Below, in pieces: positions 1,837-53,059 of a DNA stretch of 64,000 bases. Location: IMG/VR virus record IMGVR_UViG_3300020154_000003, positions 248,001-312,000 of that record, one strand, 5' to 3'. The notes under the pieces were generated by a model. That model did not search any database and was not told where the DNA came from. It saw only the letters and a program-made list of their open reading frames with translations. How positions within the stretch are numbered: position 1 is the first letter of the stretch; each line of letters opens with the position of its first letter. Both the position numbers and the translations under genes were made by a program.

Positions 1837-1859
1837 TACGGAGAATAATGTGAATTGTT
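1837..1859 (-). promoter_or_regulatory. ECF-type promoter motif AAC-N16-CGTA upstream of the tRNA-like element
   Basis: gtgAAC-16 nt-CGTAtaat on minus strand, 17 nt before the tRNA 5' end. Confidence 0.65.
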
Positions 1860-1863
1860 CACA

Positions 1864-2013
1864 CTATTCAATCTTTTTTCGACAAAATTCTTTATTCGCT
1901 TTTTTCTTTTTGTCAGGGACAACCATAGGTTTGGGCATGATATTAGTTTCACGACTAATTTTTTTAGCCATCTTAAGTCTGTCCAAATTCGTTATGGTTT
2001 TCTTCGTTTTCAA
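1864..2013 (-). CDS. small basic hypothetical protein (49 aa, TTG start; not in ORF track)
   Basis: Read manually: MKTKKTITNLDRLKMAKKISRETNIMPKPMVVPDKKKKANKEFCRKKIE; start overlaps upstream stop (TTGA). Confidence 0.55.
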   Translation of the reverse strand: MKTKKTITNLDRLKMAKKISRETNIMPKPMVVPDKKKKANKEFCRKKIE

Positions 2014-2240
2014 AATCCTATAAATCTATATACTGGAAGTACTGTAAATTGGGAATGTTGCCACCTCTCCGAATTCTCAGCATGAGCCAAAGCCTCTTCC
2101 ACCGTATCAAACTCCTGTTCTTCACGATAATCAGGGCCGTAATTATTCCCTGAAGGATCGGTTAAAGTTAATGTAAATGAACCATTTATTGAGGTTTCAA
2201 TCAGAAACACTAAACGATATTTTGTTACTAAACGCTTCAT
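2010..2240 (-). CDS. hypothetical protein
   Basis: 76-aa ORF in a tightly packed minus-strand run. Confidence 0.65.
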   Translation of the reverse strand: MKRLVTKYRLVFLIETSINGSFTLTLTDPSGNNYGPDYREEQEFDTVEEALAHAENSERWQHSQFTVLPVYRFIGF

Positions 2241-2245
2241 AACTA

Positions 2246-2467
2246 TTAATTAAGTATGACAAAAATCAATGCTTTCGGGTTATATACATTATAACACCAA
2301 TCAATTACTGGCTGTTTCGTTATCCAGTACATCTGTGTTGTTTTCAGATTCGCTTTGCGAAACTCCATGAGCAATTCAAGATCACCGAAGCCTGATTCAA
2401 ACAGGACTTCGTGTGATATTAAAGATGACTTCAAATCTTCGATATTAGCTGGTTCAATATGTTCCAT
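2246..2467 (-). CDS. hypothetical protein
   Basis: 73-aa ORF, co-oriented, short gaps. Confidence 0.65.
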   Translation of the reverse strand: MEHIEPANIEDLKSSLISHEVLFESGFGDLELLMEFRKANLKTTQMYWITKQPVIDWCYNVYNPKALIFVILN

Positions 2468-2476
2468 AACTTTATT

Positions 2477-3565
2477 TTATAAATCGTCATCACTATTATT
2501 AATAAATGGCTTACACCATTTTGGTCTCACAAGAGGCCAAATGTTTCTGCTAATGTCCTTCCCATCCATAAGACTGAACACCAGCTTGGAGTTAGTGCAA
2601 TTCTTAAACACATATTCTGCCATTTCCTTTCTTGAAGAAAAGTTTTGTAACATGACTTCACGGTGTTCCAACATAGCACGTTCGTGGACTTCATTGAATC
2701 GATCCGTAAGTTCTTGCACAGTCTTTTTGATGAACTGGTCAAATTCATCAGGTGTTCTATCCAATAATTCATCGAATGATTTTCCATCTCTCAAATGCTC
2801 CCATACAATCACATTCGAAACGTTAGTTACGATGCTATGCAAACGGCAGTATTCTTCGAACTTCATTTTCACTCTGAATCCGTTGATGAACTTAGCAATA
2901 TATCCTTCACGGTTGGAGTCCTGCACATCCCTTACTTTTTCAAGGTCAGTAAACCCATCGTATCTTTTAACAACTTCAAAACCGATCTCTTCCAAAGGCA
3001 AGTCATTTCCAGTGGTATTGTCAATTACTGCCAACAATACCAGATCATCCTTCCCAAAGTAATCGCAGACAATCCTGTTTTCAGGATAGATGATTTCGAA
3101 CAGATATGTCGCACCTTTGTTCAACTTCTCAAAAGTGTGCTGGTATCTTTCGTACAGAACCTTGTTTGCGTGTTTAGCCTGATCGCTCTCAAAGCTTCCT
3201 CTGGAAGCGATATAAGGCTTGCCATTCAACCAATACAAAATACCCAACGAACCGTCCATCTTTTCGTATAGTTCGAAAGGAAGTGCAGGAATCTGCTCTG
3301 GTGTGTGTTCCTCATAATTGAAAAACTTGATGAATGGTCTAGCGACAATATTCATCTCACCATCAAGGATTAGTCCCCGTGTAAGCAAAGTGATCTCGTT
3401 CCACAATCTTTCGAATTGGGCCTTACGGGTATAGTTGTAGATGTACAGGTCTGCGTTAGGGTGTTTTTGCACCATGACGTATTCCTGAGCCAACATTTCC
3501 TTAAGTAATTCCTTATTCATATTATATACAGCTAGAAACTCACCCGATTTTGCCATCGGGGTCAA
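2477..3565 (-). CDS. T4 Rnl1-like RNA ligase
   Basis: Motif I EKMDGSLG; N-terminal YNYT...RGLILD...ARPFIKFFNY; FEIIYPENRIV; EGYI and RVKMKFEEY motifs. Confidence 0.9.
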   Translation of the reverse strand: MTPMAKSGEFLAVYNMNKELLKEMLAQEYVMVQKHPNADLYIYNYTRKAQFERLWNEITLLTRGLILDGEMNIVARPFIKFFNYEEHTPEQIPALPFELYEKMDGSLGILYWLNGKPYIASRGSFESDQAKHANKVLYERYQHTFEKLNKGATYLFEIIYPENRIVCDYFGKDDLVLLAVIDNTTGNDLPLEEIGFEVVKRYDGFTDLEKVRDVQDSNREGYIAKFINGFRVKMKFEEYCRLHSIVTNVSNVIVWEHLRDGKSFDELLDRTPDEFDQFIKKTVQELTDRFNEVHERAMLEHREVMLQNFSSRKEMAEYVFKNCTNSKLVFSLMDGKDISRNIWPLVRPKWCKPFINNSDDDL

Positions 3566-3887: not shown

Positions 3888-4136
3888 TTATTCGAACATT
3901 TTTAATTGTTTTGATTGATCAGTGTAAAGTTTCTCAATGGTGATTATCCTATCCAGCAACTCATTGGCATCCTCATTACCAGTTGTAATGAAATGTCTGT
4001 CAGCCTTTAATAGAAGTTCCCGTGGCGTATTCTTAATTAAGAAATCATATCTCCGCTTGATTTTGCTCGACAACGTGGCCTGTAGTTCCAACGTTTTAGT
4101 GTATTGTTTCAGCAAATCTACTCCGTACTGTTTCAT
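3888..4136 (-). CDS. hypothetical protein
   Basis: 82-aa ORF with promoter motif upstream. Confidence 0.7.
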   Translation of the reverse strand: MKQYGVDLLKQYTKTLELQATLSSKIKRRYDFLIKNTPRELLLKADRHFITTGNEDANELLDRIITIEKLYTDQSKQLKMFE

Positions 4137-4162
4137 AATAAATAAATACCCACCATCAAATA

Positions 4163-4185
4163 TACGTGTATTTTGTAAATAAGTT
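4163..4185 (-). promoter_or_regulatory. ECF-type promoter motif AAC-N16-CGTA
   Basis: ttgtAAC-16 nt-CGTAtatttg, intergenic; also contains TAnnTTTG. Confidence 0.65.
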
Positions 4186-4187
4186 AC

Positions 4188-4218
4188 AAAAAAAGGGTGA
4201 TATTGCTATCACCCTTTT
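4188..4218 (-). terminator. intrinsic terminator after rIIB-like gene
   Basis: AAAAGGGTGATA-GCAA-TATCACCCTTTT followed by further Ts. Confidence 0.8.
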
Positions 4219-4246
4219 CACAAACAGTACAGAAACAAACAGTATT

Positions 4247-5413
4247 TTATTGGTTCAGGATGGTATTCAAATCAACCAATCTGGATTCAAGTATCTTTTT
4301 GTAATCAAGCTGATTGGGTGCCGATCTCACTCCATTATTTTCTGCTTGTTGGATAGCATCCAGATCACGCTCAACCTGTTCCTTCTCATATGCTGAGTAG
4401 TCGGTTTCGAAGTATGGTTGTTCAAGCACGTCAAAATGAGTACCCTTTTCGTCCTTCGATACATTCAGGACAGCATACGGATAGTATTCAGCAGTCCTCA
4501 TTTTTGTTGACTCGCTGCTCGGAACGTGAATGACATGTGCTGGATTCACGAGTACCATCAATACGGTCTCACCTTGATTGTAGAACCATTTCACATATGG
4601 TGTTGAACCAACGTGTAAACCATTTGAACTACATTCAACCGTATGAGGTTCAAACTGGCGTTCCTTCCTAACTGCTTCTCCCAACATGATTCGGGTTGTG
4701 CCGTTATGCTTGTCGGTATAGACAACTTTATCGGTAGCAGCGTCAATTTTATCAAATAGATCAGATAGGTTACCAACAAATTTAACGTTCTCGTTCAGAT
4801 CAGGGATGACACTATCATCAAGAACGGAATTCATGACGATGTAGGTGTTCTTCGTAGTATCTCTCAATACTGAATAGTTCTTCGGAGATTTTTTGTTCAG
4901 CTTAACCCTCTTATACTTTTCCTGAACATATGCGACCAATTCCGCATCCATCGAGTTTTGGAGTGTTTTCACAACTTTGTAAGCAATGAAATATCCATTA
5001 TCAGTAATGGCGAACTGATATTGCTGCAGAAAATCAAATAACGTTTGGCGAATCTTCACATCTGGATTTAGCATGAGCAACTTCCAAAAATTGACCAGTG
5101 CTTCTGTGGGGAAGTTGTTGTCAATGTATTCCAAAAACGTGTTTACAAGTACTTCAGGAATCGGTTCATTGAAACCTTTCAGGAAGTATTGATCGTTTTC
5201 AGTTTCCAGAAAACCATGTACGACTGCTCGATACATGCGATTTAGACTAGTCAGAAGCGTATTCAATTCTCTTTCACCACCCCTCTTAGCTTCCAGCGCA
5301 AGTTTGAAGAATTCATCGGCCTGAGCCTTCTCTTCAAAGCTTTTTTGGTAAACATTACCATCAATCAAGAGATTGACTACTTTACCAATTTTATTTGCTA
5401 CGATTGTCGCCAT
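4247..5413 (-). CDS. rIIB: rIIB-like protein
   Basis: YFIAYKVV, CSSNGLHVG and VLVNPAHVIHVP...KMRTAEY motifs; directly downstream of rIIA-like gene. Confidence 0.8.
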   Translation of the reverse strand: MATIVANKIGKVVNLLIDGNVYQKSFEEKAQADEFFKLALEAKRGGERELNTLLTSLNRMYRAVVHGFLETENDQYFLKGFNEPIPEVLVNTFLEYIDNNFPTEALVNFWKLLMLNPDVKIRQTLFDFLQQYQFAITDNGYFIAYKVVKTLQNSMDAELVAYVQEKYKRVKLNKKSPKNYSVLRDTTKNTYIVMNSVLDDSVIPDLNENVKFVGNLSDLFDKIDAATDKVVYTDKHNGTTRIMLGEAVRKERQFEPHTVECSSNGLHVGSTPYVKWFYNQGETVLMVLVNPAHVIHVPSSESTKMRTAEYYPYAVLNVSKDEKGTHFDVLEQPYFETDYSAYEKEQVERDLDAIQQAENNGVRSAPNQLDYKKILESRLVDLNTILNQ

Positions 5414-5450
5414 TTTATTATTTTTATAAATTTGTTACAAAGTTACTGCT

Positions 5451-7643
5451 TTATTTTACGTAAACCAACTTAATAAGTTTCATCAATTCAGGGTTTTTTG
5501 TTGCGTCATCCCATTTACTATCAGGAATATTGATGTAGTCCAACATTGTGTTTTTCTCCATCTGCTGTTCCATGTAGGCTAACTCTTTCTCGAAACCTGC
5601 AGTCAATTTATTTTCATCGATTTGAAGCAGTGTAAAGTCAATCGGAAGGTGTTTCTGAGATAAGGATTTAACTTTATTATAGTGATTCTCAACACTTTTA
5701 CTGTACACTTTCAATTTCTTATCAACGGTGGTCAGTGCTTTGTTGAAGAAAAGAGAATTCAAATTCTCATACCTATCAACGAATTTCTTTGCTTGAAGAA
5801 TGGAGATCACCTTATCACGTTTCTTCATGATGAACTTCTTGATGAAGAGTGAATGATGAATTACGTTTTTGAAGTTCTTCACAAATCCCTCATTACCCTT
5901 AGCGATTGCAATGAATTTGATTTTTTTGTTAGAACCTAAAAGATAATCTCTGTAGTTGTTCTTCGTGCTCTTAGCTACGTCCAATTGTTCTGTCAGTTCG
6001 TAATAATTGCTAAGAGTGCGTTCATCATCTTTGAAACCATATACAATAGTCCCTTTGAAATCATGAAGCTGGCGCAGGATCACCCTTGTACGGTCATAAC
6101 CTCCTGCAATCGCATTTACGGGAATTTCGTGATCAAGAAGCACTTCATTCACCACATTCCTCTTCGGGATTTCAAAATATTCAGGTACAACGATGCTATC
6201 GTAGTGTTTCGTTTCTGCTTTGATTACGCCCATCACTTCATCCATAAGCATCATTGCTTCCTTTTCAATTTCAGGGCTGGATGGTAGAACCTTTCCATCA
6301 GATTTTGTGAGAAATACATCTTTCAAAATTTGATCGAACTTCTCATCGTAAGCATCTTTCACAGGTGAGATTGATACGTATACTCCTAACTCTGCTTTTA
6401 AATAAGCTTGTACACGTCTCTTTCTTTTAGTTCCAACAGGAGTGAAGATCAAATTATGCCATTTATGCATCGTTAGAAGTCCACCATCCCAAGTCTCTTT
6501 TCTGTAGCGTTTCTTACCAGTATTACCAATGGTGCGAATGTTAATGAGGGCATCAACAACAGAACTGGCACTCGGAATAAAAGGCAACGCTTTGTATTTC
6601 GGATATACCAACTCGCTACTTTTGGCAATAGTACCGATGAAAATAGATACGTCTTTCTTAGCATCGATAACAAGTCTACCGTATGCGTCTTTGCATTGGT
6701 AGTAATCTTTGATCGTAGAGATATTTTTATGCTGCGCCAACAGCATGTCCTTCAATTCTTGTTTTGCTGCTTCGATCTTCAGCTTGATCATTTTTTTTGT
6801 ATGATCATTATATTCAAGACTCTCACGGGAAGCACCAACGTTGAGTTCACCAATATCGAATCTCAAAGCCACAGGTATACTATGTTCCCTTTCATCAATA
6901 CCAATTGCATTGTAGTCTATAGGGTATGCCACACGTCCCAAACAGATGTGCATTTTGCTGGAATAGTCGTTTCCTCTGTAAAGGAAATTTTGGCCAGTAT
7001 AGATGACGTATTCGTTGATTACCGAGTTACTAAACCCTTCGAAAATCACATTTTCAAAGTAGTAAAGTTGACGGTTGATTTCTCTTTCAAAGTTGTAGAT
7101 GTCACTACCTTTGATCGGAACTTTGACAGTCGTTCCATTGCGTTCAATCGTATCCTCGGTCGAAAGAAGGTCAATGACAGGAGATTTTTGACCTTTGTAA
7201 ATACAGTAATAGTATTTTTTACCGTTGAAGTTGGTAACAATATAGAACGAATCTGTATACGCCAAAGGAGTTTTTCCACCAATACCGAAACCACCGATTT
7301 GGTTGTTATCACCTCTCTTTGTGGTTTTGAAATACTTCGCATAGATGGTAGCGATCCGTTCAGGGGACATACCAACTCCAACATCAATAAATTGAATGTA
7401 GTGTTGGCCATTTTCTTTTATCAGACGAATAACAACAGGCTCATTGATGTTAGCTTCTTTATGAGAATCGAAGCAATTGGATGTGATTTCACGAACGATT
7501 GAGCCGATGGGGTTTGAATAGATGTTTTTCGTAAACATCGCAAAGATCATTTCATCGGAATTTTCGTCAAATCCGAAGGCAATGGATTTTTCAGTGCCTA
7601 TCGATTCTACTGTTTCTTCTGAGAATGCGGTATTGAGTTTCAT
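5451..7643 (-). CDS. rIIA: rIIA-like protein (N-terminal GHKL ATPase)
   Basis: IYSNPIGSIVREITSNCFDSH, DVGVGMS, TKRGDNNQIGGFGIGGK, GELNVGASRESLEY. Confidence 0.85.
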   Translation of the reverse strand: MKLNTAFSEETVESIGTEKSIAFGFDENSDEMIFAMFTKNIYSNPIGSIVREITSNCFDSHKEANINEPVVIRLIKENGQHYIQFIDVGVGMSPERIATIYAKYFKTTKRGDNNQIGGFGIGGKTPLAYTDSFYIVTNFNGKKYYYCIYKGQKSPVIDLLSTEDTIERNGTTVKVPIKGSDIYNFEREINRQLYYFENVIFEGFSNSVINEYVIYTGQNFLYRGNDYSSKMHICLGRVAYPIDYNAIGIDEREHSIPVALRFDIGELNVGASRESLEYNDHTKKMIKLKIEAAKQELKDMLLAQHKNISTIKDYYQCKDAYGRLVIDAKKDVSIFIGTIAKSSELVYPKYKALPFIPSASSVVDALINIRTIGNTGKKRYRKETWDGGLLTMHKWHNLIFTPVGTKRKRRVQAYLKAELGVYVSISPVKDAYDEKFDQILKDVFLTKSDGKVLPSSPEIEKEAMMLMDEVMGVIKAETKHYDSIVVPEYFEIPKRNVVNEVLLDHEIPVNAIAGGYDRTRVILRQLHDFKGTIVYGFKDDERTLSNYYELTEQLDVAKSTKNNYRDYLLGSNKKIKFIAIAKGNEGFVKNFKNVIHHSLFIKKFIMKKRDKVISILQAKKFVDRYENLNSLFFNKALTTVDKKLKVYSKSVENHYNKVKSLSQKHLPIDFTLLQIDENKLTAGFEKELAYMEQQMEKNTMLDYINIPDSKWDDATKNPELMKLIKLVYVK
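5457..5479 (-). promoter_or_regulatory. ECF-type promoter motif AAC-N16-CGTA for rIIB, embedded in the rIIA 3' end
   Basis: aAAC-16 nt-CGTAaaat, 43 nt upstream of rIIB start. Confidence 0.5.
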
Positions 7644-7673
7644 TTCTGTTTACTGTTTGTTTGTATGGAGTTA

Positions 7674-7696
7674 TACGTAAACAATGTGAAAAAGTT
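7674..7696 (-). promoter_or_regulatory. ECF-type promoter motif AAC-N16-CGTA upstream of rIIA
   Basis: ttgtAAC-16 nt-CGTAtaac. Confidence 0.7.
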
Positions 7697-8129
7697 ACAA
7701 ATTAATGAATAAATCCTCTTCATACATTCTACTGCCCGGAAGCTGCGTATGAGCGATTATTTTGTCCCGATTCCTAATTAAGTGTTGGTGATTTACCTTA
7801 ATGCAGCTAAACTTAGTTGTCCCCACTGACACATATTGACTATAACCAGACCTCCTAGGCAGGGTAAAAGTCAATTCTCTAAAATCAATAATCTTATGTC
7901 TATGACCAGTTCTTAAACAAATAATATAGGTATCTTCATCTTTGACCCAATTGTCATTAAGAATCAGATACCCTTGACCAAGGCTTAGTAATATGTCCGC
8001 TTCAAGGTCGATCTTTCTACCTATTTTGACAGACAAATAATCCTCGATTTCATCCAAGTATTTATTATCCTCGTATGGATTTCCACCGCTAATTACAACA
8101 TTAATTTTATGTTTTTCTAATGCTGTCAC
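7695..8129 (-). CDS. hypothetical protein
   Basis: 144-aa ORF overlapping neighbour by 4 nt. Confidence 0.75.
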   Translation of the reverse strand: MTALEKHKINVVISGGNPYEDNKYLDEIEDYLSVKIGRKIDLEADILLSLGQGYLILNDNWVKDEDTYIICLRTGHRHKIIDFRELTFTLPRRSGYSQYVSVGTTKFSCIKVNHQHLIRNRDKIIAHTQLPGSRMYEEDLFINL

Positions 8130-8626
8130 AATTTTGCAAGTTCTTCCTTAAGAGACTTCAAATCTTCTTCCAATTTCTTTTTCTTCTCTGTAAGGGCGAG
8201 TTTGAGAACCCTTTTAACGTCCGAAGCTGACGCTTGCCTGCGGCCATTAAGTATCTGCCCTTCAACATCATTGAATGCAGACATCTTGATGACTTCTGAT
8301 TTAATTATTTTAGTACCGTCAGCAGCATAAACTTCCCATTCGAGATCGACATTCACCAACAGTGCTTTGGTACGTGCAGTAACTGCCGGTTTATTTTCTG
8401 TAATCTTGAAAGACTGTAATCTCCAATATGAGATGCCTGACTTTTCACCTTCACGAAGAAACCACTTTGTAGAATTCGTATTGATGAAACTTTTTAACAT
8501 GTCAGAAAGAAACTTAACACCCAATTCAGGAGTCGCTTTAAGTTGTTTCAGTATTTCTCTGCGTTCCTTGTCGATTTCACCAAGTCTCTTTGACAGTCTT
8601 TCAAATGAGGAAATTTTTATTGCCAT
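8126..8626 (-). CDS. hypothetical protein with coiled-coil ends
   Basis: 166-aa ORF. Confidence 0.75.
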   Translation of the reverse strand: MAIKISSFERLSKRLGEIDKERREILKQLKATPELGVKFLSDMLKSFINTNSTKWFLREGEKSGISYWRLQSFKITENKPAVTARTKALLVNVDLEWEVYAADGTKIIKSEVIKMSAFNDVEGQILNGRRQASASDVKRVLKLALTEKKKKLEEDLKSLKEELAKL

Positions 8627-8648
8627 TGTCTGTATTATTTAATTTTTT

Positions 8649-9479
8649 TTACATTCTAATTGATCTTACGTAGTCAATGTGTTCCTTACTCATTGGCACA
8701 CCAGTAAAATTGATTGCCAAGAATACCCGCAAAGCATCTTTGTCAGTTGTGTCTTCATCCAGTTCCACATAAAATAACTGTCGATAGGATAAAAATATAT
8801 GCTGCGCTTCGCTGGACAAATCTGAATAAAGATTACCATGCAAATCCGGGAATTTATCGTTATAGAATTCCCATAACGCATTGAATCTCTGTTTTCCATC
8901 AACTAAGTCTGCGAAAGCTGTGTGTTCAAATTTTCCTTCTTTGATACGGCTTTCAACCCAATCCCATGATCGTCTTCTAAACACGAATTTGCCGATTTCA
9001 ACATGGTTATAAATGGATTCAATCAGCATTTGTTTCTGCTCTAATGTCCATACCAACCCACGCTGGTATTCGACTTCATTCCCCTCACTATCGATGACTG
9101 TAGGGTCTTGACAAACCTCAGGGATTGTTTTTCCGTTCACTGACTCAAAACGTTTGCCTCTATCCCTCGCTTCGACACCACCCCGCCAGAATAGCTGCTC
9201 AATATCTATTGCATAAGCACTAGCCCTTAATTCAGGTTGAAATGGATTAGCACCAATTTCACGGACGCTTTTTCGTACTTCGGTAAGCTTTCTGGTTTGG
9301 AGTTCACGATACCCATGTCTTTCGAAAAAGACTGTATCTCCCTCTACCTTAAGTACTTCAACCAGTTCTTCGCTATCAGGTCGATTAAACGACATACCCT
9401 TCACATAGATGCCATCGCCCTTAATTAAGGGTTTTGCAAGGTATTCGGCTATGAGTTCCGCTTTGGTTTTTGCTTTCAT
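8649..9479 (-). CDS. DUF262 (GmrSD N-terminal, ParB/Srx-like) domain protein
   Basis: YQRGLVWT...QKQMLIESIY...IGKFVF, LVDGKQRFNAL, FLAINFTGVPM. Confidence 0.8.
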   Translation of the reverse strand: MKAKTKAELIAEYLAKPLIKGDGIYVKGMSFNRPDSEELVEVLKVEGDTVFFERHGYRELQTRKLTEVRKSVREIGANPFQPELRASAYAIDIEQLFWRGGVEARDRGKRFESVNGKTIPEVCQDPTVIDSEGNEVEYQRGLVWTLEQKQMLIESIYNHVEIGKFVFRRRSWDWVESRIKEGKFEHTAFADLVDGKQRFNALWEFYNDKFPDLHGNLYSDLSSEAQHIFLSYRQLFYVELDEDTTDKDALRVFLAINFTGVPMSKEHIDYVRSIRM

Positions 9480-9488
9480 ATGATATTA

Positions 9489-9511
9489 TACGTAAATTGA
9501 CGTAAAATGTT
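9489..9511 (-). promoter_or_regulatory. ECF-type promoter motif AAC-N16-CGTA (divergent pair, left)
   Basis: aAAC-16 nt-CGTAtaat, 9 nt before DUF262 ATG. Confidence 0.7.
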
Positions 9512-9544
9512 TGAGATTAGCAAGTTAATAACTTGTTTGAACGT

Positions 9545-9567
9545 AACAAATTATTCTCATATACGTA
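9545..9567 (+). promoter_or_regulatory. ECF-type promoter motif AAC-N16-CGTA (divergent pair, right)
   Basis: gtAAC-16 nt-CGTAtaat, 12 nt before ATG at 9580. Confidence 0.7.
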
Positions 9568-9579
9568 TAATACTTTATC

Positions 9580-9945
9580 ATGTTCACAAAACAGCAAAAA
9601 GACGAACTGCTCTGTCGCATTGAGATCAGGAAGGATACAATTGAAGAGGATTTGGATAGTGCTGATGCATTTGAGGCTATACCTGATGCACTCGATAAAC
9701 TCAGAGAAAAGATTCTTTACGATTCTAAAGACTTCAGTGAGGCTGAAAAAAAGTGGATGATTGAGGAATTAGACAATCAATTGGGGGTCTCAGTACGTGA
9801 TGATCATCAAATCAGGGGAGCAATTACTAAAATTAAGAACTTACCCAACCCTGAACTTAAGGAACGAGAAGCATACCTGAATAACATTAATGAAGTATTG
9901 GGTTTGGATGAAAACGTACTTAAAGAAAAGCGTAAAAAAAGATAA
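9580..9945 (+). CDS. hypothetical protein
   Basis: 121-aa ORF opening a plus-strand island. Confidence 0.75.
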   Translation: MFTKQQKDELLCRIEIRKDTIEEDLDSADAFEAIPDALDKLREKILYDSKDFSEAEKKWMIEELDNQLGVSVRDDHQIRGAITKIKNLPNPELKEREAYLNNINEVLGLDENVLKEKRKKR

Positions 9946-9948
9946 AAT

Positions 9949-10569
9949 ATGGAAGACAAGAAATCAACTTTAGGCTCATTGTTGCTTGAAGAATTGAAAA
10001 AAACTCGTGAGGAATTGGGTAACATTTATTATCACTTATTCGCCATCAAAGGTGAAAAGGATTTGAGTGAAGTACTGGAAGTGTATTACGCTCTATCAAA
10101 GGAAAATCCAGAAAATTGGTTCGCCTCATTCCATAAGTCCATGAGACAAACAGATTTCTTTCAAGACTGCACGGTGTCAATATCTAACCCAACGATTACC
10201 GATGAAGAGCGGATAGAATTACAGACACTTAGTGCTGATTACCATAAGACTGATAAGCATCTCTCTCAATTTGAAAATGGATTGCTAGAAGCACTCCCTA
10301 CTCCTGATGACCCAACATACAAGGAGAGGTATAACAGCTATGTCGATACTTATCGACTTAAGTTTCGAGAATTCTTTCCTCAAGAAAAAATAAACAGGAG
10401 AAGGGAACTGATAAAAAAACTGCGAAACAAAGAAGAACATTCTATAAGTGGACATTTGGATTCAATTCTTTGGCTGACTATTGCCAATGATCAAAATGGT
10501 TTATTATATTTGACCATCGACCATGTTTTCAGCGAGTACGATTACAAGAAAAAACATAAACTAGTATAA
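9949..10569 (+). CDS. hypothetical protein
   Basis: 206-aa ORF. Confidence 0.8.
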   Translation: MEDKKSTLGSLLLEELKKTREELGNIYYHLFAIKGEKDLSEVLEVYYALSKENPENWFASFHKSMRQTDFFQDCTVSISNPTITDEERIELQTLSADYHKTDKHLSQFENGLLEALPTPDDPTYKERYNSYVDTYRLKFREFFPQEKINRRRELIKKLRNKEEHSISGHLDSILWLTIANDQNGLLYLTIDHVFSEYDYKKKHKLV

Positions 10570-12305: not shown

Positions 12306-12702
12306 AATCTAAAAAATCTGCGCAATACATTGATATGATGGCGTTATAGTAAACCTGACCTGCTACACTTAACCCACCATTATCGAGCCAATAAGCATCA
12401 CTATCATACAAAACCTGAACCTCAGACAAAAAGTTTTTCCCAAGTTCATAAATTTCAGATGGAAGGTATGTGGAGATGTCCTCCATTTCTAACTTGTCAT
12501 TAACTAAACGCCTTAAATTTTTGACACTACCAGTTAATTCTTCAGGTTTGTGTTCATCACTGATATAACGACCAATCGCACATTTAAGTCCGTGTTCGTT
12601 TTTATATTTTCTATCAGAATTTCGTCTATGTGGGTGTGTTCCATAAAAATAGACCATATCGTTTAAAAAACGTGTTCTTGCTTCCTGCAATGTTTCCATC
12701 AT
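12289..12702 (-). CDS. hypothetical protein
   Basis: 137-aa ORF with KCAIG motif. Confidence 0.75.
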   Translation of the reverse strand: MMETLQEARTRFLNDMVYFYGTHPHRRNSDRKYKNEHGLKCAIGRYISDEHKPEELTGSVKNLRRLVNDKLEMEDISTYLPSEIYELGKNFLSEVQVLYDSDAYWLDNGGLSVAGQVYYNAIISMYCADFLDYEYNF

Positions 12703-13307
12703 ATTTCCTTTGGAGCCACAACTCTGAACCGAGTTAGCAAATTATTGTAGCGATTTTTATAGGTGAGAAACAACTCACTCCAATCATATTTATTCATTAT
12801 TTCCTCGAACAATAGATTACAACATCCATAGTCGTATATCTTGCCCTTCTCTGCCAATTGAATACCATATTCGATGATCCGCATGGCATGGAATAAACTC
12901 TTTCTTCCAAGGCTTAAATCATAGTCCTTTTCGACAGTCAATTTCTTTTTGGCCTTAACCCAACTGTTGGATGATTTTGCTCGAAGGGAATATCTTAATT
13001 TAGTATTGTCTATATTAAAAGAGAATTTTCTTTTCTCTAACAAGATGAATTGAGAATCCAGAAACTGACATTCAATAGCAGATATTTCATGCTCATCAAG
13101 CCGTTGCTGATGTTCCTCCGGGGTGTAAAAATTGATGTTAATTAGATTGTCGGAAAACTGCTTATTGACCTTATTTGTGGTCACTACAATGAAATCGTAA
13201 TCCGACTGCTTTGTGATATTCCCATACACCCTTGACCCGTATACGTAGACTGCAACCACCTCTTTTTCAGATAATTTGGCTTTGGTCAGGATGGTGTGTA
13301 AATTCAT
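12699..13307 (-). CDS. Pol-beta-superfamily nucleotidyltransferase
   Basis: YVYGSRVYGN...SDYDF (GS + DxD); ATG at 13307 preferred over GTG 13313. Confidence 0.8.
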   Translation of the reverse strand: MNLHTILTKAKLSEKEVVAVYVYGSRVYGNITKQSDYDFIVVTTNKVNKQFSDNLININFYTPEEHQQRLDEHEISAIECQFLDSQFILLEKRKFSFNIDNTKLRYSLRAKSSNSWVKAKKKLTVEKDYDLSLGRKSLFHAMRIIEYGIQLAEKGKIYDYGCCNLLFEEIMNKYDWSELFLTYKNRYNNLLTRFRVVAPKEI

Positions 13308-13316
13308 ACCCACTTT

Positions 13317-13339
13317 TACGTAAAACTTGGGAAATTGTT
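13317..13339 (-). promoter_or_regulatory. ECF-type promoter motif AAC-N16-CGTA
   Basis: aAAC-16 nt-CGTAaaag in the gap before the nucleotidyltransferase. Confidence 0.6.
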
Positions 13340-25899: not shown

Positions 25900-25922
25900 T
25901 ACGGATTTTGCGGTTAATTGTT
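25900..25922 (-). promoter_or_regulatory. ECF-type promoter motif AAC-N16-CGTA (second divergent pair, left)
   Basis: acAAC-16 nt-CGTAtatt, 11 nt before ATG 25888. Confidence 0.65.
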
Positions 25923-25930: not shown

Positions 25931-25953
25931 AACAAAATTCTCTATTTATCGTA
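25931..25953 (+). promoter_or_regulatory. ECF-type promoter motif AAC-N16-CGTA (second divergent pair, right)
   Basis: atAAC-16 nt-CGTAtata, 9 nt before ATG 25963. Confidence 0.65.
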
Positions 25954-34724: not shown

Positions 34725-34908
34725 TATTTACATTGCAGTTATTTACTAATGATAATTCTATACCAAAATCACATTCAAGCAATTTGTGTAATTATAAATT
34801 TTTTACGCGAGAAAAGAACGACAATAACATAATTTATTTATACTAAATCTGAACGTTTTCATATAGTATTGTTTAAATATAAATACTTGATTAATGAGTG
34901 AAGGGAAT

Positions 34909-38969: not shown

Positions 38970-39012
38970 TGGTTTTATACTTTTTTATAAATACCAACCA
39001 ACTGAAAATCTG

Positions 39013-39234: not shown

Positions 39235-39710
39235 TAAAATTCGTTTTGGATTTGTAATTCATTATCTCTCCAGTACTTATAGAAATCATTAAAATAAGCC
39301 TGAACCTTCTTTATAATTTCATCATTATCAGGATTCGTAGGATCGAAACCTTCAAGATACTTTATATCTACTTTTTTGTCCTTTTCATCAGGAGCAACAA
39401 TGTAAGAAAATAACAACTGGCCGTTGATTTTACCAGCCCAAAACACTGCATTATCATATACTTCCAAGGGTTGAAATTCGATATTAACGTTATCATCCTG
39501 AAAGTAATTCAGCATTTTTTCCTGCTCACGATCAATTTCAGCTTGACTCAAAGTTCTAGCACCGTCAGTAGCCTCGTTCAACTTTCTCATAACACCCATC
39601 ATGTCCCTCATAGACATTTCCTGTACTGGTTGTTTTTTATATCCCATTACACGACCATATCTATCTGTGGTTTGTGTTATTTTATCCAGAATGTTATTCT
39701 TCATGATCAT
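39234..39710 (-). CDS. hypothetical protein
   Basis: 158-aa ORF. Confidence 0.75.
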   Translation of the reverse strand: MIMKNNILDKITQTTDRYGRVMGYKKQPVQEMSMRDMMGVMRKLNEATDGARTLSQAEIDREQEKMLNYFQDDNVNIEFQPLEVYDNAVFWAGKINGQLLFSYIVAPDEKDKKVDIKYLEGFDPTNPDNDEIIKKVQAYFNDFYKYWRDNELQIQNEF

Positions 39711-39722
39711 AAATACTTTTCC

Positions 39723-40379: not shown

Positions 40380-40402
40380 AGGAATAAATACCCGTTTATT
40401 GT

Positions 40403-40425
40403 AACTTTTAGTGTGATTTTACGTA
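40403..40425 (+). promoter_or_regulatory. ECF-type promoter motif AAC-N16-CGTA
   Basis: ttgtAAC-16 nt-CGTAtaat, 20 nt before ATG 40446. Confidence 0.75.
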
Positions 40426-50341: not shown

Positions 50342-50408
50342 AAAAATCTCGTTTCTTTCACTATAAATACCGTGAAAGACTTCATTTTTTTAGACAAAAA
50401 GAAATTAA

Positions 50409-51533: not shown

Positions 51534-51536
51534 ATA

Positions 51537-51923
51537 TTAATCTCCGGGTTCTAAGGTATCATTCGAAATTCTTTTAAGATTTTGATCCCTTTCTTTCAGT
51601 TTTTCCATAACCAACTTATTATTGTCACGAAGCTTTTCCAAATACGGGATCAATCGATCAGCGTCTTCCGGGTTCATCAAAAAAGTATCCCAATCACCGT
51701 ATCTTGACCTATAACCAAAAATGTACTTAATGGCCACCCAAATTCTTTTAAAGAATCCATTATACTCCGTCAAATGGATCGATACATCCATACAGTCTTC
51801 ATAAATCGCACCCTCAATACCAGTAATATCCTCGCGCTCTTCTGAGCAATAAGTAAATACAATTTGATGTTCAACTGACGAACATTCACATATTAAAACT
51901 TCGGTTTTATTCATTTCGGTCAT
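51537..51923 (-). CDS. hypothetical protein
   Basis: LICECSSVEHQI...FKRIWVAIKYIFGYRSRYGDWD. Confidence 0.75.
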   Translation of the reverse strand: MTEMNKTEVLICECSSVEHQIVFTYCSEEREDITGIEGAIYEDCMDVSIHLTEYNGFFKRIWVAIKYIFGYRSRYGDWDTFLMNPEDADRLIPYLEKLRDNNKLVMEKLKERDQNLKRISNDTLEPGD

Positions 51924-52055
51924 TTTTTCAGATAGAGTACATTAAACAATGCAAATTTGTCACAAATTACAACAAATATATGCTAAAATTCGAATTGGTA
52001 CAACATTTATAGATATTTCTTCAGAAATAACATTTATAATAAATACATAAAAATT

Positions 52056-52463
52056 ATGAACTTAATTAAACACAAAACACCCCTATTTGACCTGCTTTTG
52101 AGCGATATTTTTAATGAAAATGAAACTGTCGCCAAATCATTTGAAACAGTTTATACGCCACTCGGTGACGTACTGGAAACTGACGAGCAATATCTCATAG
52201 AATTGATGCTTCCGGGCTTTACTAAAAGCGATGTGAAAATCGACCTTCAAGATAATGTGCTTACAGTAAGTGGTGAGAGAAAAAAAGGTGAAGTGAAATA
52301 TAATAGACAGGAAAGCTATTATGGTAAAATCAAAAAACTATACACCTTACCAAATCATATTAGTGTTGACGACATTAAAGCTAAATTCGAGAACGGTGTT
52401 TTAAAACTCACTATTCCGAAAGACGTTAAAAAGCTGCAAGCAAATTCAATTGAGATCGAATAA
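52056..52463 (+). CDS. Hsp20/alpha-crystallin small heat-shock protein
   Basis: DVLETDEQY.IELMLPGF.KSDV.I, LTVSGER, AKFENGVLKLTIPK. Confidence 0.92.
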   Translation: MNLIKHKTPLFDLLLSDIFNENETVAKSFETVYTPLGDVLETDEQYLIELMLPGFTKSDVKIDLQDNVLTVSGERKKGEVKYNRQESYYGKIKKLYTLPNHISVDDIKAKFENGVLKLTIPKDVKKLQANSIEIE

Positions 52464-52467
52464 AGTA

Positions 52468-52498
52468 GGAGGGGGAACACCCCTCTTTACTGTTTTTT
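52468..52498 (+). terminator. probable terminator after Hsp20
   Basis: GAGGGG-GAACA-CCCCTC followed by T-rich tract. Confidence 0.55.
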
Positions 52499-53059
52499 AA
52501 GTTTCTTATGAAGCTTGCTTTTGGTGTAGTTGATTTTATTTGAGACCGTAGAACTGGTCAAAGAGTATACTTGTCCAATTTCATTATGTGAGTAACCCTC
52601 AACATACTTCATCTTAATCATACGTTCAGATTCATGGTCAAGATCGGAGGTTATATAATTAAGTGTGTTATCTGTTGCAAATTTCTCTTCAAAATTATCC
52701 TGACAGGGTATTTCAATGAAATGATTTTTATCAATATCCTCAATCTGATTGTAAACGAAATGTTCTGTTCTATTAGAGAGTTTATTTTTAAAATTTATTG
52801 TAGTATTCTCAGCAATAGTTAAAACCCATGTTTTGAAATTTGACTTATCGGAATCGTATTCTTTCAAATTAGATAGCATCTTCACCACAGTATCCGATGT
52901 CAAATCTTCTGAATCTTCGTTTGTTAATTTGAATTTTTTCTTGATATGTTTTTTTATTTCCTCCGTATAGTAGGAATACAACTCATTATTCGCTTTGGAA
53001 TTATTATCGTTTAGTATAGAATTTAAAAGTTCTACATCTCTATCTTGTCTTGAAATCAT
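52487..53059 (-). CDS. ECF-family RNA polymerase sigma factor
   Basis: Region 2 EDLTSD..VK.......YD....NFKTWVLTIAEN; region 4 MKYVEGYSHNEIG....TVSNKINY.K.KL. Confidence 0.9.
   Translation of the reverse strand: MISRQDRDVELLNSILNDNNSKANNELYSYYTEEIKKHIKKKFKLTNEDSEDLTSDTVVKMLSNLKEYDSDKSNFKTWVLTIAENTTINFKNKLSNRTEHFVYNQIEDIDKNHFIEIPCQDNFEEKFATDNTLNYITSDLDHESERMIKMKYVEGYSHNEIGQVYSLTSSTVSNKINYTKSKLHKKLKKQ

What the first reader, a model, noticed from the sequence alone, without database searches (positions are those of the whole stretch)
1837..53059. Window-wide AAC-N16-CGTA promoter motif and a phage-encoded ECF sigma factor
Seen: ten exact AAC-N16-CGTA sites, each oriented toward and within about 45 nt of a gene start: 1837, 4163, 5457, 7674, 9489, 13317 and 25900 on the minus strand; 9545, 25931 and 40403 on the plus strand. 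The best copies read TTGTAAC-N13-TTACGTATAAT. Two are back-to-back divergent pairs. Known: -35 AAC with -10 CGT(A) is the classic ECF promoter form (B. subtilis SigW TGAAAC-N16-CGTA). The window encodes an ECF sigma at 52487-53059. Inference: this sigma, or a host ECF sigma, drives an early/middle regulon including the tRNA-like/ncRNA locus, rIIA/B, DUF262 and the nucleotidyltransferase.
Basis: partly seen in the sequence, partly recalled or inferred. Interest (0 to 1): 0.75.

Follow-up and report, generated by a model that had tools for sequence, protein, structure and literature searches.

The report
Phage-wide ECF-type promoter class
A 366-kb uncultured soil phage, probably of Bacteroidota, carries about fifty copies of a strictly spaced AAC-N16-CGTATAAT promoter of the type read by ECF sigma factors; the same consensus is used by native Flavobacterium promoters, and it is still open whether one of the phage's two ECF sigmas or a host sigma reads it.

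Summary
AAC-N16-CGTA occurs 21 times in the window against 5.1 expected. All ten listed sites exist, and two more good sites were missed (11-33 and 9562-9584, both minus strand). In the whole 366-kb phage genome only the 16-nt spacer is enriched. Of 52 sites scoring above 15 bits, 50 are intergenic and point at a nearby start codon. A, A, C, C, G and T are each near-invariant, and a T-tract follows AAC, so this is an ECF-type promoter. It is conserved in two related 360-370-kb phages, with the spacer shifted to 17 in one of them. The consensus equals that of Flavobacterium psychrophilum ECF-type promoters with mapped transcript starts, including the rpoD promoter.

The window protein is an ECF sigma, but the genome encodes a second, more canonical ECF sigma and a third sigma-like protein, both outside the window. 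It also has two further promoter classes: GTAACCTT-N13-CGTTAA, clustered around the second sigma gene, and a -10-only GTATTTAT. The window sigma is the leading candidate for the motif only by elimination (about 0.4). The second phage sigma (about 0.2) and a host ECF sigma (about 0.25) remain live. No transcript-start data exist for the phage itself.

The parts
11..33 (-). It is followed by TAtaTTTG.
   Evidence: Highest PWM score in the window (35.9 bits), intergenic.
1837..1859 (-). Class 1 promoter upstream of a tRNA-like gene.
   Evidence: 26.1 bits. An Rfam tRNA match lies at 1730-1818(-), starting about 19 nt after CGTA.
1730..1818 (-). tRNA-like gene driven by site 1837.
   Evidence: Rfam RF00005 at 44.3 bits against a gathering score of 29. 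ARAGORN did not call it.
4163..4185 (-). Class 1 promoter upstream of the 82-aa ORF 3888-4136. A class 3 box (GTATTTAT, 4142-4149) lies between promoter and gene.
   Evidence: 21.5 bits. The orthologue in G001 keeps AAC-N16-CGTATAAT.
5457..5479 (-). Class 1 variant (CGTAAAAT) upstream of rIIB (4247-5413), embedded in the end of rIIA.
   Evidence: 15.1 bits. The same ...TTTACGTAAAAT is found upstream of rIIB in G001 and G002. rIIB identified by PHROG.
7674..7696 (-). Class 1 promoter upstream of rIIA (5451-7643).
   Evidence: 30.7 bits. The rIIA orthologues in G001 and G002 carry AAC-N17-CGTATAA(G/T). rIIA matches phrog_612 at 3e-67.
9489..9511 (-). Class 1 promoter upstream of the DUF262/GmrSD_N gene (8649-9479). 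ATG lies 9 nt after CGTA, so the mRNA is probably leaderless.
   Evidence: 30.8 bits. Pfam PF03235.
9562..9584 (-). Second, tandem class 1 site for the same gene. It overlaps the divergent site 9545(+).
   Evidence: 24.4 bits.
9545..9567 (+). Class 1 promoter upstream of ORF 9580-9945, divergent from 9489.
   Evidence: 23.4 bits, ATG 12 nt after CGTA.
13317..13339 (-). Class 1 variant (CGTAAAAG) upstream of the nucleotidyltransferase gene (12699-13313).
   Evidence: 29.4 bits. Gene matches phrog_388. Not conserved at the G001/G002 orthologues.
25900..25922 (-). Class 1 promoter upstream of ORF 25535-25888.
   Evidence: 23.4 bits, ATG 11 nt after CGTA.
25931..25953 (+). Class 1 promoter upstream of ORF 25963-26223, divergent from 25900.
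   Evidence: 21.7 bits. The G001 orthologue has AAC-N17-CGTATAAT.
40403..40425 (+). Class 1 promoter upstream of the DUF5074-like beta-propeller gene 40446-41417.
   Evidence: 25.3 bits. The G001 orthologue has AAC-N17-CGTATAAG. Pfam PF16819 is just below its cut-off.
52487..53059 (-). ECF-family sigma factor 'S300' (190 aa), one of three sigma-like genes of the phage.
   Evidence: PF04542 at 40.4 bits (cut-off 24) and PF07638 at 33.8 bits (cut-off 21.1). TIGR02937 at 79 bits (cut-off 42.9). Best solved homologue is B. subtilis SigW. About 48 metagenomic homologues, many on 130-370-kb contigs.
53083..54117 (-). Primase-like gene immediately upstream of the sigma gene (23-nt gap), probably co-transcribed. 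The same gene order is found in G001 and G002.
   Evidence: Weak DNAG_N hit. Synteny.
54158..54189 (-). Bacteroidota sigmaA-like promoter (TTTG-N20-TACTTTTA) upstream of the primase-sigma pair, followed by a hairpin plus T-run at about 54134-54157.
   Evidence: A TAtaTTTG box is also present upstream of the primase orthologue in G001 and G002. Inference only.

Best explanation
The motif is the core of a phage promoter class ('class 1', consensus wwnnnnAACaTTTT-N7-tTTaCGTATAAT-N5-A). There are about 52 copies in the 366-kb genome and 12 in the window. It is recognised by host core RNA polymerase carrying an ECF-type (group 4) sigma. Region 4 reads AAC and the flanking T-tract at -35. Region 2 reads CGTA at about -13 to -10. 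Transcription starts at the conserved A about 10 nt after CGTA, often the A of the start codon, giving leaderless mRNA. The class serves early/middle functions: rIIA/B, DUF262, nucleases, small ORFs and some tRNA genes. It is one of three phage-specific promoter classes.

The most likely arrangement is one class per sigma-like protein.
- The window sigma S300 is made early, probably from a host sigmaA-type promoter together with the primase-like gene, and reads class 1.
- The second ECF sigma S175 (outside the window) reads, and autoregulates from, class 2 (yGTAACCTT-N13/14-CGTTwA).
- The gp55-like S31 reads the -10-only class 3 (aGTATTTAT) of late genes.
- The S31 operon itself sits behind a weakened class 1 variant (AAG-N16-TGTATAAT).

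Shown: the motif, its spacing, its placement and its conservation; the ECF nature of the proteins; and identity of the consensus with native Flavobacterium ECF-type promoters. Inferred: transcript start position, temporal class, and above all which sigma reads which class.
For: Motif reality and ECF architecture:
- Enrichment, spacing specificity and the top rank in the dyad scan.
- Leave-one-out counts: each of A, A, C, C, G, T gives 47 sites against at most 7 for any substitute.
- T-tract after AAC, and a conserved A 10 nt after CGTA in 42 of 51 sites.
- 50 of 52 sites are intergenic.
- These features match published ECF promoter rules: AAC/CGT, CGTA selectivity and the -35-proximal T-tract (PMC5758882; PMC7776599).

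Functional precedent:
- F. psychrophilum promoters with mapped transcript starts read GTAAC-N16-CGTATAACC (motif SM6, 'SigECF') and TGTAAC-N17-CGTATAACC (rpoD) (PMC9723704 Table S2).

Conservation:
- The class is present in G001 and G002 and at orthologous genes: rIIA, rIIB, DUF5074, orf25963, orf3888.

Not a Bacteroidota sigmaA promoter:
- The host type is TTTG/TAnnTTTG. It occurs separately about 18 times, including at tRNA operons.

Sigma repertoire:
- Three sigma-like genes, all conserved in the relatives.

S175 assigned to class 2:
- A class 2 site lies 40 nt upstream of the S175 gene in G000, and likewise in G001, G002, L064 and L066.
- Class 2 clusters around that gene (bins).
- Class 2 spacing follows the S175 clade, while class 1 spacing does not.

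S31 assigned to class 3:
- Class 3 has no -35 element, and S31 shows only region-2 homology.

Cascade links:
- A sigmaA-like box lies upstream of the primase-S300 pair in all three genomes.
- A class 1-like variant upstream of the S31 operon is conserved in G001.

A host regulon as the sole explanation is weak:
- 401 Bacteroidota genomes have at most 8 pattern matches each, not above control, against 17-23 in each phage genome.
- All sufficiently large viral contigs with several exact copies of the motif also encode their own ECF-like sigma.
Against: - No experiment or transcript-start data exist for this phage. Public runs labelled metatranscriptomic gave only fragmentary contigs.
- The S300-to-class 1 link is by elimination only.
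- The S300 recognition helix reads S-N-K-I-N-Y-T-K where SigW has K-T-R-I-H-R-G-R and AlgU/RpoE have R-S-R-I-F-R-A-R. It therefore lacks the basic residue at the position that specifies the C of AAC (RpoE Arg171 to -31, PMC7776599).
- That helix is invariant in the family, and S300 has no indel between G000 and G001. Even so, class 1 spacing shifts from 16 to 17 at orthologous promoters.
- No class 1 site precedes the S300 gene, so it is not autoregulated, unlike most ECF sigmas.
- Outgroup phage fragments that show only S175-like sigmas carry dense arrays of GTAACCTTTT-N16/17-CGTATAAT. S175-type sigmas can therefore plausibly read the CGTATAAT -10.
- A host sigma with exactly this specificity exists and drives host rpoD constitutively.
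Confidence: 0.4

Rival explanations
1. A host ECF sigma, the one that reads the Flavobacterium SM6 and rpoD promoters, transcribes class 1. The phage has copied a host promoter type that is always on, so class 1 genes are true early genes. The phage sigmas would then serve the other classes: S175 and/or S300 for class 2, S31 for class 3.
For: - The extended consensus is identical to host promoters with mapped transcript starts: GTAAC-N16-CGTATAACC (Band 7 gene, SM6) and TGTAAC-TTTTT-N9-cTTA-CGTATAAC (rpoD). rpoD is expressed in all 32 conditions tested.
- The same promoter lies 33-37 nt upstream of the primary sigma gene in at least 12 sampled Bacteroidota genomes. It also lies upstream of a Band 7 gene in another genome.
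- This model solves the question of who transcribes the first phage genes.
- rIIA/B-type and anti-defence genes are typically early.
- The host uses both N16 and N17.
Against: - Spacing is strict and lineage-specific: G000 has 46 sites at N16 against 3 at N17, and G001 has 38 at N17 against 8 at N16. It shifts in concert at orthologous promoters. That fits a co-evolving phage factor better.
- The host regulon is tiny, with at most a few sites per genome. In F. psychrophilum SM6 activity rises mainly under starvation and is linked to an anti-sigma pair, a poor basis for about 50 strong phage promoters.
- Every sufficiently large phage contig with multiple copies of the motif encodes its own ECF sigma.
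- The actual host is unknown. Pedobacter rpoD lacks the CGTA element.
Confidence: 0.25
2. The second phage ECF sigma, S175 (G000:175356-175919, outside the window), reads class 1, alone or together with class 2. The window sigma S300 reads class 2 or something else. This gives a linear cascade: sigmaA to S300, S300 to class 2 (including S175), S175 to class 1 (including the S31 operon), S31 to class 3.
For: - Every sigma gene would sit behind the promoter class of the previous tier, as in SPO1-type cascades.
- S175 has the canonical AAC-reading helix G-T-V-K-G-T-I-F-N-A-R, aligned to RpoE/AlgU G-T-V-R-S-R-I-F-R-A-R, and a strong Sigma70_r4_2 hit.
- Outgroup phages with only S175-like sigmas use GTAACCTTTT-N16/17-CGTATAAT.
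- S175 region 2 is well conserved, as is the class 1 -10. Its region 4 helix varies (KGTIFN, KAKMHF, KATLHH), as does the class 1 -35 flank. The invariant S300 helix parallels the invariant class 2 -35, yGTAACCTT.
Against: - Class 2 spacing, not class 1 spacing, follows the S175 clades. L064 and L065 have near-identical S175 helices but class 1 spacing of N16 and N17 respectively.
- ECF sigmas are usually autoregulated, which points to S175 reading class 2.
- Only three full genomes are available, so the covariation arguments are weak and confounded by phylogeny.
Confidence: 0.2
3. The sites are housekeeping-sigma promoters (nnAACA-N17-TATAAT read as -35/-10), or non-promoter repeats such as operator or recombination sites.
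For: The downstream half contains TATAAT 17 nt from AACA. A few sites carry TAtaTTTG, the Bacteroidota sigmaA -7 box.
Against: - The invariant positions are AAC and CGT. The T corresponding to -7 of TATAAT is present in only 30 of 51 sites.
- Bacteroidota sigmaA uses TTTG/TAnnTTTG (PMC9723704). TTGnnn-N17-TATAAT is not enriched at any spacing.
- The orientation towards genes, the fixed distance to start codons and the mapped host transcript starts all argue for promoters.
Confidence: 0.05

Closest known systems
Flavobacterium psychrophilum ECF-type promoters (motif SM6) and the rpoD promoter (Guerin et al. 2021, PMC9723704)
   Same: Same consensus, including flanks: GTAAC-N16/17-(t)TA-CGTATAA. 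It has a CGT box at -10 and a T-tract after AAC. The transcript start is mapped about 9-10 nt after CGTA, where the phage sites have a conserved A. The lineage (Bacteroidota) is the probable host phylum.
   Different: It is a cellular regulon of a few promoters per genome, and its sigma has not been identified. Here there are about 50 copies in a 366-kb phage that encodes its own ECF sigmas.
Bacillus subtilis SigW / SigX / SigM / SigV promoters (TGAAAC-N16-CGTA; Gaballa et al. 2018, PMC5758882)
   Same: AAC at -35, CGT(A) at -10, a 16-17-nt spacer, and a -35-proximal T-tract (tGAAACnTTTt). Related sigmas are discriminated by the base after CGT. SigW is the best solved homologue of the window sigma.
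   Different: A Firmicute stress regulon controlled by anti-sigmas. The phage sigma is only distantly related (E = 2.5e-5) and has a different recognition helix. No anti-sigma was seen.
Phage-encoded sigma factors with their own promoter classes: SPO1 gp28 and gp33/34, T4 gp55, phiEco32 gp36 (PMC12276001)
   Same: A phage redirects host core RNAP with its own sigma(s) to temporally ordered promoter classes. The -10-only class 3 (GTATTTAT) parallels T4 late promoters. The sigma genes appear to be placed so that one class switches on the next.
   Different: The known phage sigmas are highly diverged and read idiosyncratic motifs, for example AATGTA for gp36. Here two bona fide ECF sigmas go with textbook AAC/CGT promoters that mimic a host class, in a huge phage of Bacteroidota.
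Streptomyces ECF sigma ShbA driving the principal sigma gene hrdB (PMC12019637; title and abstract only)
   Same: An ECF-type promoter upstream of the housekeeping sigma gene, as found here upstream of Flavobacterium-like rpoD.
   Different: A different phylum and motif. It is relevant only to the host-side observation.

Membership tests
ECF (group 4) sigma-70 family sigma factor (window ORF 52487-53059) | Sigma region 2 domain | tested here: met
   PF04542 at 40.4 bits against a cut-off of 24. In the six-frame search, 42.4 bits.
ECF (group 4) sigma-70 family sigma factor (window ORF 52487-53059) | Sigma region 4 helix-turn-helix domain | tested here: inconclusive
   PF04545 scores 21.8 bits (cut-off 24.1) and PF08281 scores 17.4 bits (cut-off 25.7), both below cut-off. 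Full-length models do cover it: PF07638 at 33.8 bits (cut-off 21.1) and TIGR02937 at 79 bits (cut-off 42.9), residues 23-187. The alignment to SigW runs through the recognition helix.
ECF (group 4) sigma-70 family sigma factor (window ORF 52487-53059) | Small two-domain protein (about 200 aa) without regions 1.1 and 3 | tested here: met
   190 aa. Only r2 and r4/ECF models hit.
ECF (group 4) sigma-70 family sigma factor (window ORF 52487-53059) | Canonical basic residues of the -35 recognition helix (RpoE R171, R173, R176, R178) | tested here: not met
   The helix is S-N-K-I-N-Y-T-K, against K-T-R-I-H-R-G-R in SigW. It is invariant in 15 family members. This is not a defining feature of the family, but it bears on AAC recognition.
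ECF (group 4) sigma-70 family sigma factor (window ORF 52487-53059) | Autoregulatory promoter and a co-transcribed anti-sigma | tested here: not met
   No class 1 or class 2 site upstream. The gene follows a primase-like gene with a 23-nt gap. No anti-sigma-like neighbour was noted. These features are common in ECFs but not obligatory.
ECF (group 4) sigma-70 family sigma factor (window ORF 52487-53059) | Binds core RNAP and directs initiation | not testable with these tools
   Needs biochemistry. The complex prediction with DNA was not run by the tool.
ECF-type promoter | Conserved AAC in the -35 element | tested here: met
   Leave-one-out counts: 47 sites with A, A, C against at most 7 with any other base, which is background level.
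ECF-type promoter | Conserved CGT in the -10 element | tested here: met
   47 sites against at most 5 for substitutes at C, G and T.
ECF-type promoter | Fixed 16-17-nt distance between AAC and CGT | tested here: met
   Only N16 is enriched in G000 and G002, and only N17 in G001.
ECF-type promoter | Located upstream of genes and oriented towards them | tested here: met
   50 of 52 sites are intergenic. Start codons lie 3-53 nt downstream in the window.
ECF-type promoter | Transcript start about 7-10 nt downstream of the -10 element | not testable with these tools
   No RNA 5'-end data for the phage. Indirect support: a conserved A 10 nt after CGTA, and mapped starts at the equivalent place in F. 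psychrophilum.
ECF-type promoter | Activity depends on an ECF sigma | not testable with these tools
   Needs in vitro transcription or reporter assays.
Bacteroidota sigmaA promoter (-33 TTTG / -7 TAnnTTTG) | TAnnTTTG box at -12 to -5, with TTTG 19-21 nt upstream | tested here: not met
   Most class 1 sites have TATAAT-like sequence, not TAnnTTTG. Separate sigmaA-like sites exist, 18 at N19 against about 9 background. A few sites (11-33, 4163, and the tRNA operon promoters) carry both signals.

The most novel reading that the evidence does not exclude
A clade of roughly 360-kb soil phages of Bacteroidota runs a multi-tier sigma cascade built from two true ECF sigmas and a gp55-like factor. Its main early/middle promoter class copies a host ECF promoter type, the one that also drives the host's own rpoD. 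Each sigma gene is wired behind the previous promoter class. The spacer optimum has shifted in concert from 16 to 17 nt at dozens of orthologous promoters between sister phages. That would make this a natural system for studying how sigma and promoter spacing co-evolve, and how a virus hijacks the control circuit of the host's housekeeping sigma.
Probability: 0.3. Interest if true: 0.75.

Novelty: new variant of a known kind. Interest (0 to 1): 0.6.

Why it matters
Phage-encoded sigmas are known, but mostly as highly diverged proteins with idiosyncratic promoters. Transcription of huge uncultured phages is essentially unmapped.

Here the promoter grammar of a 366-kb phage can be read from sequence. 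There are three phage promoter classes plus host-type promoters, and three sigma-like genes. This yields a testable temporal programme and a gene-class annotation for hundreds of unknown ORFs.

The identity of the main class with a native Flavobacterium ECF promoter type, including the rpoD promoter, links phage takeover to a poorly understood host circuit. It also supports a Bacteroidota host.

The concerted 16-to-17 spacer shift between sister phages is a rare natural experiment on promoter-sigma co-evolution. The orthogonal sigma/promoter pairs could be useful parts for Bacteroidota genetics.

Tried and rejected
1. RNA evidence. The look-up of sequencing runs found soil runs, four of them labelled metatranscriptomic. 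Read laying on window 4000-9999 returned only 90-99%-identical fragmentary contigs covering genes and spacers alike. They show no ends and no direction, so they give no transcript-start information.
2. Complex prediction with both sigmas and both promoter DNAs. The tool did not fold protein-DNA jobs, so this is no evidence either way.
3. Megablast of the sigma region against GenBank phages found no match.
4. The residue-to-base code of Todor et al. Both sigmas have K at the RpoE-56 position, which fits -11T. S300 has N or D, and S175 has D, at the RpoE-84 position, with no covariation with the -10 variants. The supplementary dictionary is not held. No assignment was possible.
5. The idea that one factor sets the spacing of both classes, because both are N17 in G001. 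Rejected: L064 has class 2 at N17 but class 1 at N16, and G002, L062 and L066 mix 16 and 17 within class 2.
6. The search for the host sigma behind the SM6/rpoD promoters. Host ECFs are only 20-32% identical to either phage sigma. The ones inspected have AACC-N16-CGTC-type promoters of their own or no promoter. It was not identified.
7. The NCBIfam BldN-family top hit of S175 (99.7 bits) is far below that model's cut-off, and the literature search on it was unproductive.
8. The sigma70-type reading (AACA-N17-TATAAT) was rejected on conservation pattern and host promoter type.

Full report
CONTEXT. The window is bases 248,001-312,000 of a single 366,038-bp IMG/VR virus record (G000). CheckV rates it 100% complete, and its GC content is 36%. 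Public runs that hold it are soil metagenomes. It has no near relative among GenBank phages.

Several features point to a Bacteroidota host:
- There is no Shine-Dalgarno signal: 9.2% of starts have an SD-like 4-mer, against 7.2% background.
- TTTG-N19/20-TAnnTTTG promoters of the Bacteroidota sigmaA type sit in front of tRNA operons in this phage and its relatives (motif as in PMC9723704).
- It has a DUF5074-like protein.
- The nearest cellular homologues of its second sigma are mostly from Pedobacter, Sphingobacteriaceae, Saprospiraceae and Chitinophagaceae.

1. AAC-N16-CGTA occurs 21 times in the window, against 5.1 +/- 2.4 in shuffles. All ten listed sites are there. Spacer length is the cleanest control. 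Genome-wide, the count is 97 at N16 against 24-47 at every other spacer from 10 to 23, and with CGTAT it is 60 against 6-16.

In an unbiased scan of all 3-mer/4-mer dyads in intergenic DNA, AAC/CGTA at N16 ranks first (64 against 6.1). A matrix built from the sites finds 52 sites above 15 bits. Fifty of them are intergenic although only 17% of the genome is intergenic. The other nine exact matches are background. Start codons follow 3-53 nt after CGTA, and both divergent pairs are confirmed.

2. ANATOMY. The consensus is AAC-a-TTTT, seven unconstrained bases, tTTa-CGTATAAT, and a conserved A (42 of 51 sites) 10 nt after the A of CGTA. Leave-one-out counts show that A, A, C and C, G, T are each practically invariant: 47 sites against at most 7 for any substitute, which is background. 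The A of CGTA and the following T and A tolerate some change.

This conservation pattern is that of ECF promoters: AAC at -35, CGT at -10, CGTA selectivity, and a -35-proximal T-tract 'AACnTTTt' (PMC5758882). It is not the pattern of a TTGACA/TATAAT promoter, because the T that would be -7 is present in only 30 of 51 sites. It is also not the Bacteroidota sigmaA type. Many sites have ATG 9-12 nt after CGTA, so the conserved A is often the start codon's A. If the transcript starts there, these mRNAs are leaderless (inference).

3. WHAT THE SITES CONTROL. In the window the downstream genes are:
- rIIA (phrog_612, 3e-67) and rIIB;
- a DUF262/GmrSD_N protein;
- a nucleotidyltransferase;
- a DUF5074-like secreted propeller;
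- several small ORFs;
- at 1837, an Rfam-positive tRNA-like gene at 1730-1818 (44 bits).

Across the genome the sites lie between 44 and 295 kb. None is found in 0-30 kb or 300-366 kb, where a different motif dominates. This fits an early/middle class (inference from gene content).

4. THE REST OF THE TRANSCRIPTION SYSTEM, MOSTLY OUTSIDE THE WINDOW.
(a) The window ORF 52487-53059 (S300) is an ECF sigma. It hits PF04542, PF07638 and TIGR02937 above cut-off, and its best solved homologue is SigW.
(b) A second, more canonical ECF sigma (S175, G000:175356-175919) has r2 at 50 bits and r4_2 at 55 bits and aligns with RpoE, AlgU and SigW.
(c) A third sigma-like ORF (S31, G000:31400-32173, 257 aa) shows only region-2 similarity.
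(d) A second ECF-type motif, yGTAACCTT-N13-cCGTTwA (class 2), has about 32 sites. Twenty-six of them are packed into 150-180 kb among small ORFs around the S175 gene, and one lies 40 nt upstream of it.
(e) A -10-only motif, aGTATTTAT (class 3), is the most enriched 8-mer upstream of genes (46 against 4 expected). It has no -35 element and serves the structural and late blocks. Ten copies lie in the window.
(f) About 18 sigmaA-like TTTG-N19/20-TAnnTTT(G/A) sites exist. One (window 54158-54189) lies upstream of the primase-like gene that precedes S300.

5. RELATIVES. Two IMG/VR genomes, G001 (371.5 kb) and G002 (362.6 kb), carry orthologues of all three sigma-like genes. S300 is 66% and 50% identical, S175 is 38% identical in G001, and S31 is 55% and 47% identical. 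Both genomes carry all three promoter classes. S300 has about 48 metagenomic homologues (46-75% identity), many on 130-370-kb contigs, and no close cellular homologue.

In G001 the class 1 spacer is 17, not 16 (97 against about 33; 38 sites against 8). The shift is seen at orthologous promoters: rIIA, DUF5074, orf25963 and DUF262. Class 2 lies directly upstream of the S175 orthologue in G001, G002, L064 and L066.

6. HOST PRECEDENT. This is the most informative result. The class 1 pattern is not enriched in 401 sampled Bacteroidota genomes: at most 8 matches per genome and not above the reversed-pattern control, against 17-23 per phage genome. One conserved site did recur, however. tTGTAAC-TTTTT-N9-cTTA-CGTATAAc lies 33-37 nt upstream of a 287-aa RpoD-type primary sigma gene in at least 12 genomes.

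The published F. psychrophilum transcript-start map (PMC9723704, Table S2) contains exactly this promoter for rpoD, with a start 31 nt before the ATG and expression in all conditions. Its 'SigECF' motif SM6 includes GTAAC-N16-CGTATAACC (Band 7 gene) and ACAAC-N16-CGTTTATAG (yceA). A Band 7 gene with GTAAC-N16-CGTATAA is also present in a sampled genome.

So a Bacteroidota sigma that reads this very consensus exists, and the motif is a working promoter in that lineage. If the printed 61-mers are -50..+10, the start lies 9-10 nt after CGTA. The responsible host sigma has not been identified, either in the paper or by me.

7. WHICH SIGMA READS CLASS 1? This is not settled.

For S175 reading class 2:
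- Its own promoter is class 2 in every genome examined.
- It sits within the class 2 cluster.
- Class 2 spacing follows the two S175 clades. Clade II, which has a one-residue deletion in region 4 and a shorter linker, is always N17. Clade I is N16 or mixed.
- Class 1 spacing does not follow those clades: L064 is N16, while L065 and G001 are N17.

For S31 reading class 3: class 3 lacks a -35 element, and S31 lacks a recognisable region 4.

It may be made early from the sigmaA-like promoter it shares with the primase-like gene; a -7 box is present there in all three genomes. The S31 operon lies behind a weakened class 1 variant, AAG-N16-TGTATAAT, conserved in G001. That gives a coherent cascade.

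Against S300 reading class 1:
- Its recognition helix (S-N-K-I-N-Y-T-K) lacks the basic residue that specifies the C of AAC in the RpoE code.
- The helix is invariant, and the protein has no indel between G000 and G001, although the class 1 spacer changed.
- Outgroup phage fragments with only S175-like sigmas carry arrays of GTAACCTTTT-N16/17-CGTATAAT: 13 units in 5.5 kb in G411 and 24 in 12 kb in G412. Their sigma genes lie behind sigmaA-type -7 boxes or an AAC-N16-CGTAC site.

My estimates are S300 about 0.4, host SM6-type sigma about 0.25, S175 about 0.2, and other about 0.15.

8. COMPARISON AND NOVELTY. The promoter type is textbook ECF, like SigW, and identical to the Flavobacterium SM6/rpoD type. 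A phage redirecting RNAP with its own sigma is a known kind of system (SPO1, T4 gp55, phiEco32 gp36).

The new elements are:
- two genuine ECF sigmas plus a gp55-like factor, with three readable promoter classes, in a clade of huge uncultured Bacteroidota phages;
- mimicry of a host ECF promoter class that also drives the host housekeeping sigma gene;
- a concerted spacer shift between sister phages.

I found no paper describing this, but the library searched is limited.

9. LIMITS.
- Gene calls are my own crude ORF model.
- The temporal classes, transcript starts and all sigma-promoter assignments are inferences.
- Only three complete genomes were available, so the covariation arguments are weak.
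- The host is unknown.
- RpoE residue numbering was mapped through the AlgU and SigW alignments and the Todor paper.

Noticed in passing
G000:158,000-176,500 and 203,000-208,000 (outside the window): A second ECF-type promoter class, yGTAACCTT-N13-cCGTTwAtATAC, with about 32 copies. They are packed among small ORFs on both strands around a second ECF sigma gene (G000:175356-175919) and lie 40 nt upstream of it. Many spacers contain palindromes: CTTAATTAAG in G000 and CCAGTACTGG in G001. These look like operator sites.
   Followed up: partly
window 4142-4149, 31466-31473, 34879-34886, 38987-38994, 39709-39716, 40384-40391, 50363-50370, 52039-52046, 57430-57437, 59863-59870 (all minus strand): A -10-only motif, aGTATTTAT(nnnnAA), 4-40 nt upstream of many genes. 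It is the most enriched 8-mer upstream of genes genome-wide and is conserved in G001 and G002. It is probably the late promoter class, analogous to T4 TATAAATA.
   Followed up: partly
G000:31400-32173 (outside the window): A third sigma-like ORF (257 aa, region-2 similarity only), conserved in G001 (55%) and G002 (47%). Its 7-gene operon is preceded by AAG-N16-TGTATAAT, a weakened class 1 variant conserved in G001.
   Followed up: partly
G000:89-126 kb, 158 kb, 362 kb (outside the window): The phage encodes 54 tRNA genes, including two with anticodon CTA (amber-reading). G001 has 48 and G002 has 61. The tRNA operons have hybrid promoters, AAC-N16/17-CGTATTTA-N8-TAcaTTTG. These overlay a class 1-like site on a Bacteroidota sigmaA TTTG-N19-TAnnTTTG promoter, and are conserved in all three genomes.
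   Followed up: partly
window 1730-1818 (-): A tRNA-like gene found by Rfam (44.3 bits, 89 nt) but not by ARAGORN, starting about 19 nt after the CGTA of site 1837. The rest of window 1-1700 has only short ORFs and may hold further non-coding genes.
   Followed up: partly
window 9489, 9545, 25900, 25931 and many genome sites: ATG lies 9-12 nt after CGTA, so the conserved A at +10 is often the A of the start codon. These genes are probably expressed as leaderless mRNAs. The genome as a whole shows no Shine-Dalgarno signal.
   Followed up: partly
L088-L099 (12 sampled Bacteroidota genomes) and F. psychrophilum rpoD (PMC9723704, Table S2): The primary sigma gene of Flavobacterium-like bacteria sits behind a conserved ECF-type promoter, tTGTAAC-N17-CGTATAAc, not a sigmaA-type one. 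The mapped transcript start was left unclassified by the authors' algorithm. Pedobacter rpoD keeps TGTAACATTTTCAG but has a TACTTTTG box instead of CGTA.
   Followed up: partly
G001 (IMGVR_UViG_3300032157_000001) against G000, orthologous promoters of rIIA, DUF5074, orf25963, DUF262: A concerted shift of the class 1 spacer from 16 to 17 nt between sister phages. In contig L064, class 1 is N16 while class 2 is N17.
   Followed up: partly
L168 (IMGVR_UViG_3300028734_000038) and L175 (IMGVR_UViG_3300031578_000005): Fragments of other large phages carry dense arrays of ttGTAACCTTTT-N16/17-CGTATAAT units, 13 and 24 respectively. In L168 each unit is followed by the same cttaaacaaacac leader. Both fragments encode S175-like ECF sigmas about 30% identical to S175.
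   Followed up: partly
window 54134-54157 (-): A perfect 9-bp hairpin (ATGCTTTGA/TCAAAGCAT) followed by a T-run lies between the sigmaA-like box and the primase-like gene. It is conserved in G001, and G002 has a different hairpin at the same place. It could be a terminator of the upstream operon or an attenuator.
   Followed up: no
window 26979-30293 (+): A 1104-aa fusion of an Mre11-like phosphoesterase with a Rad50/SbcC-like ATPase (Metallophos plus AAA_23/SMC_N) in one ORF.
   Followed up: no
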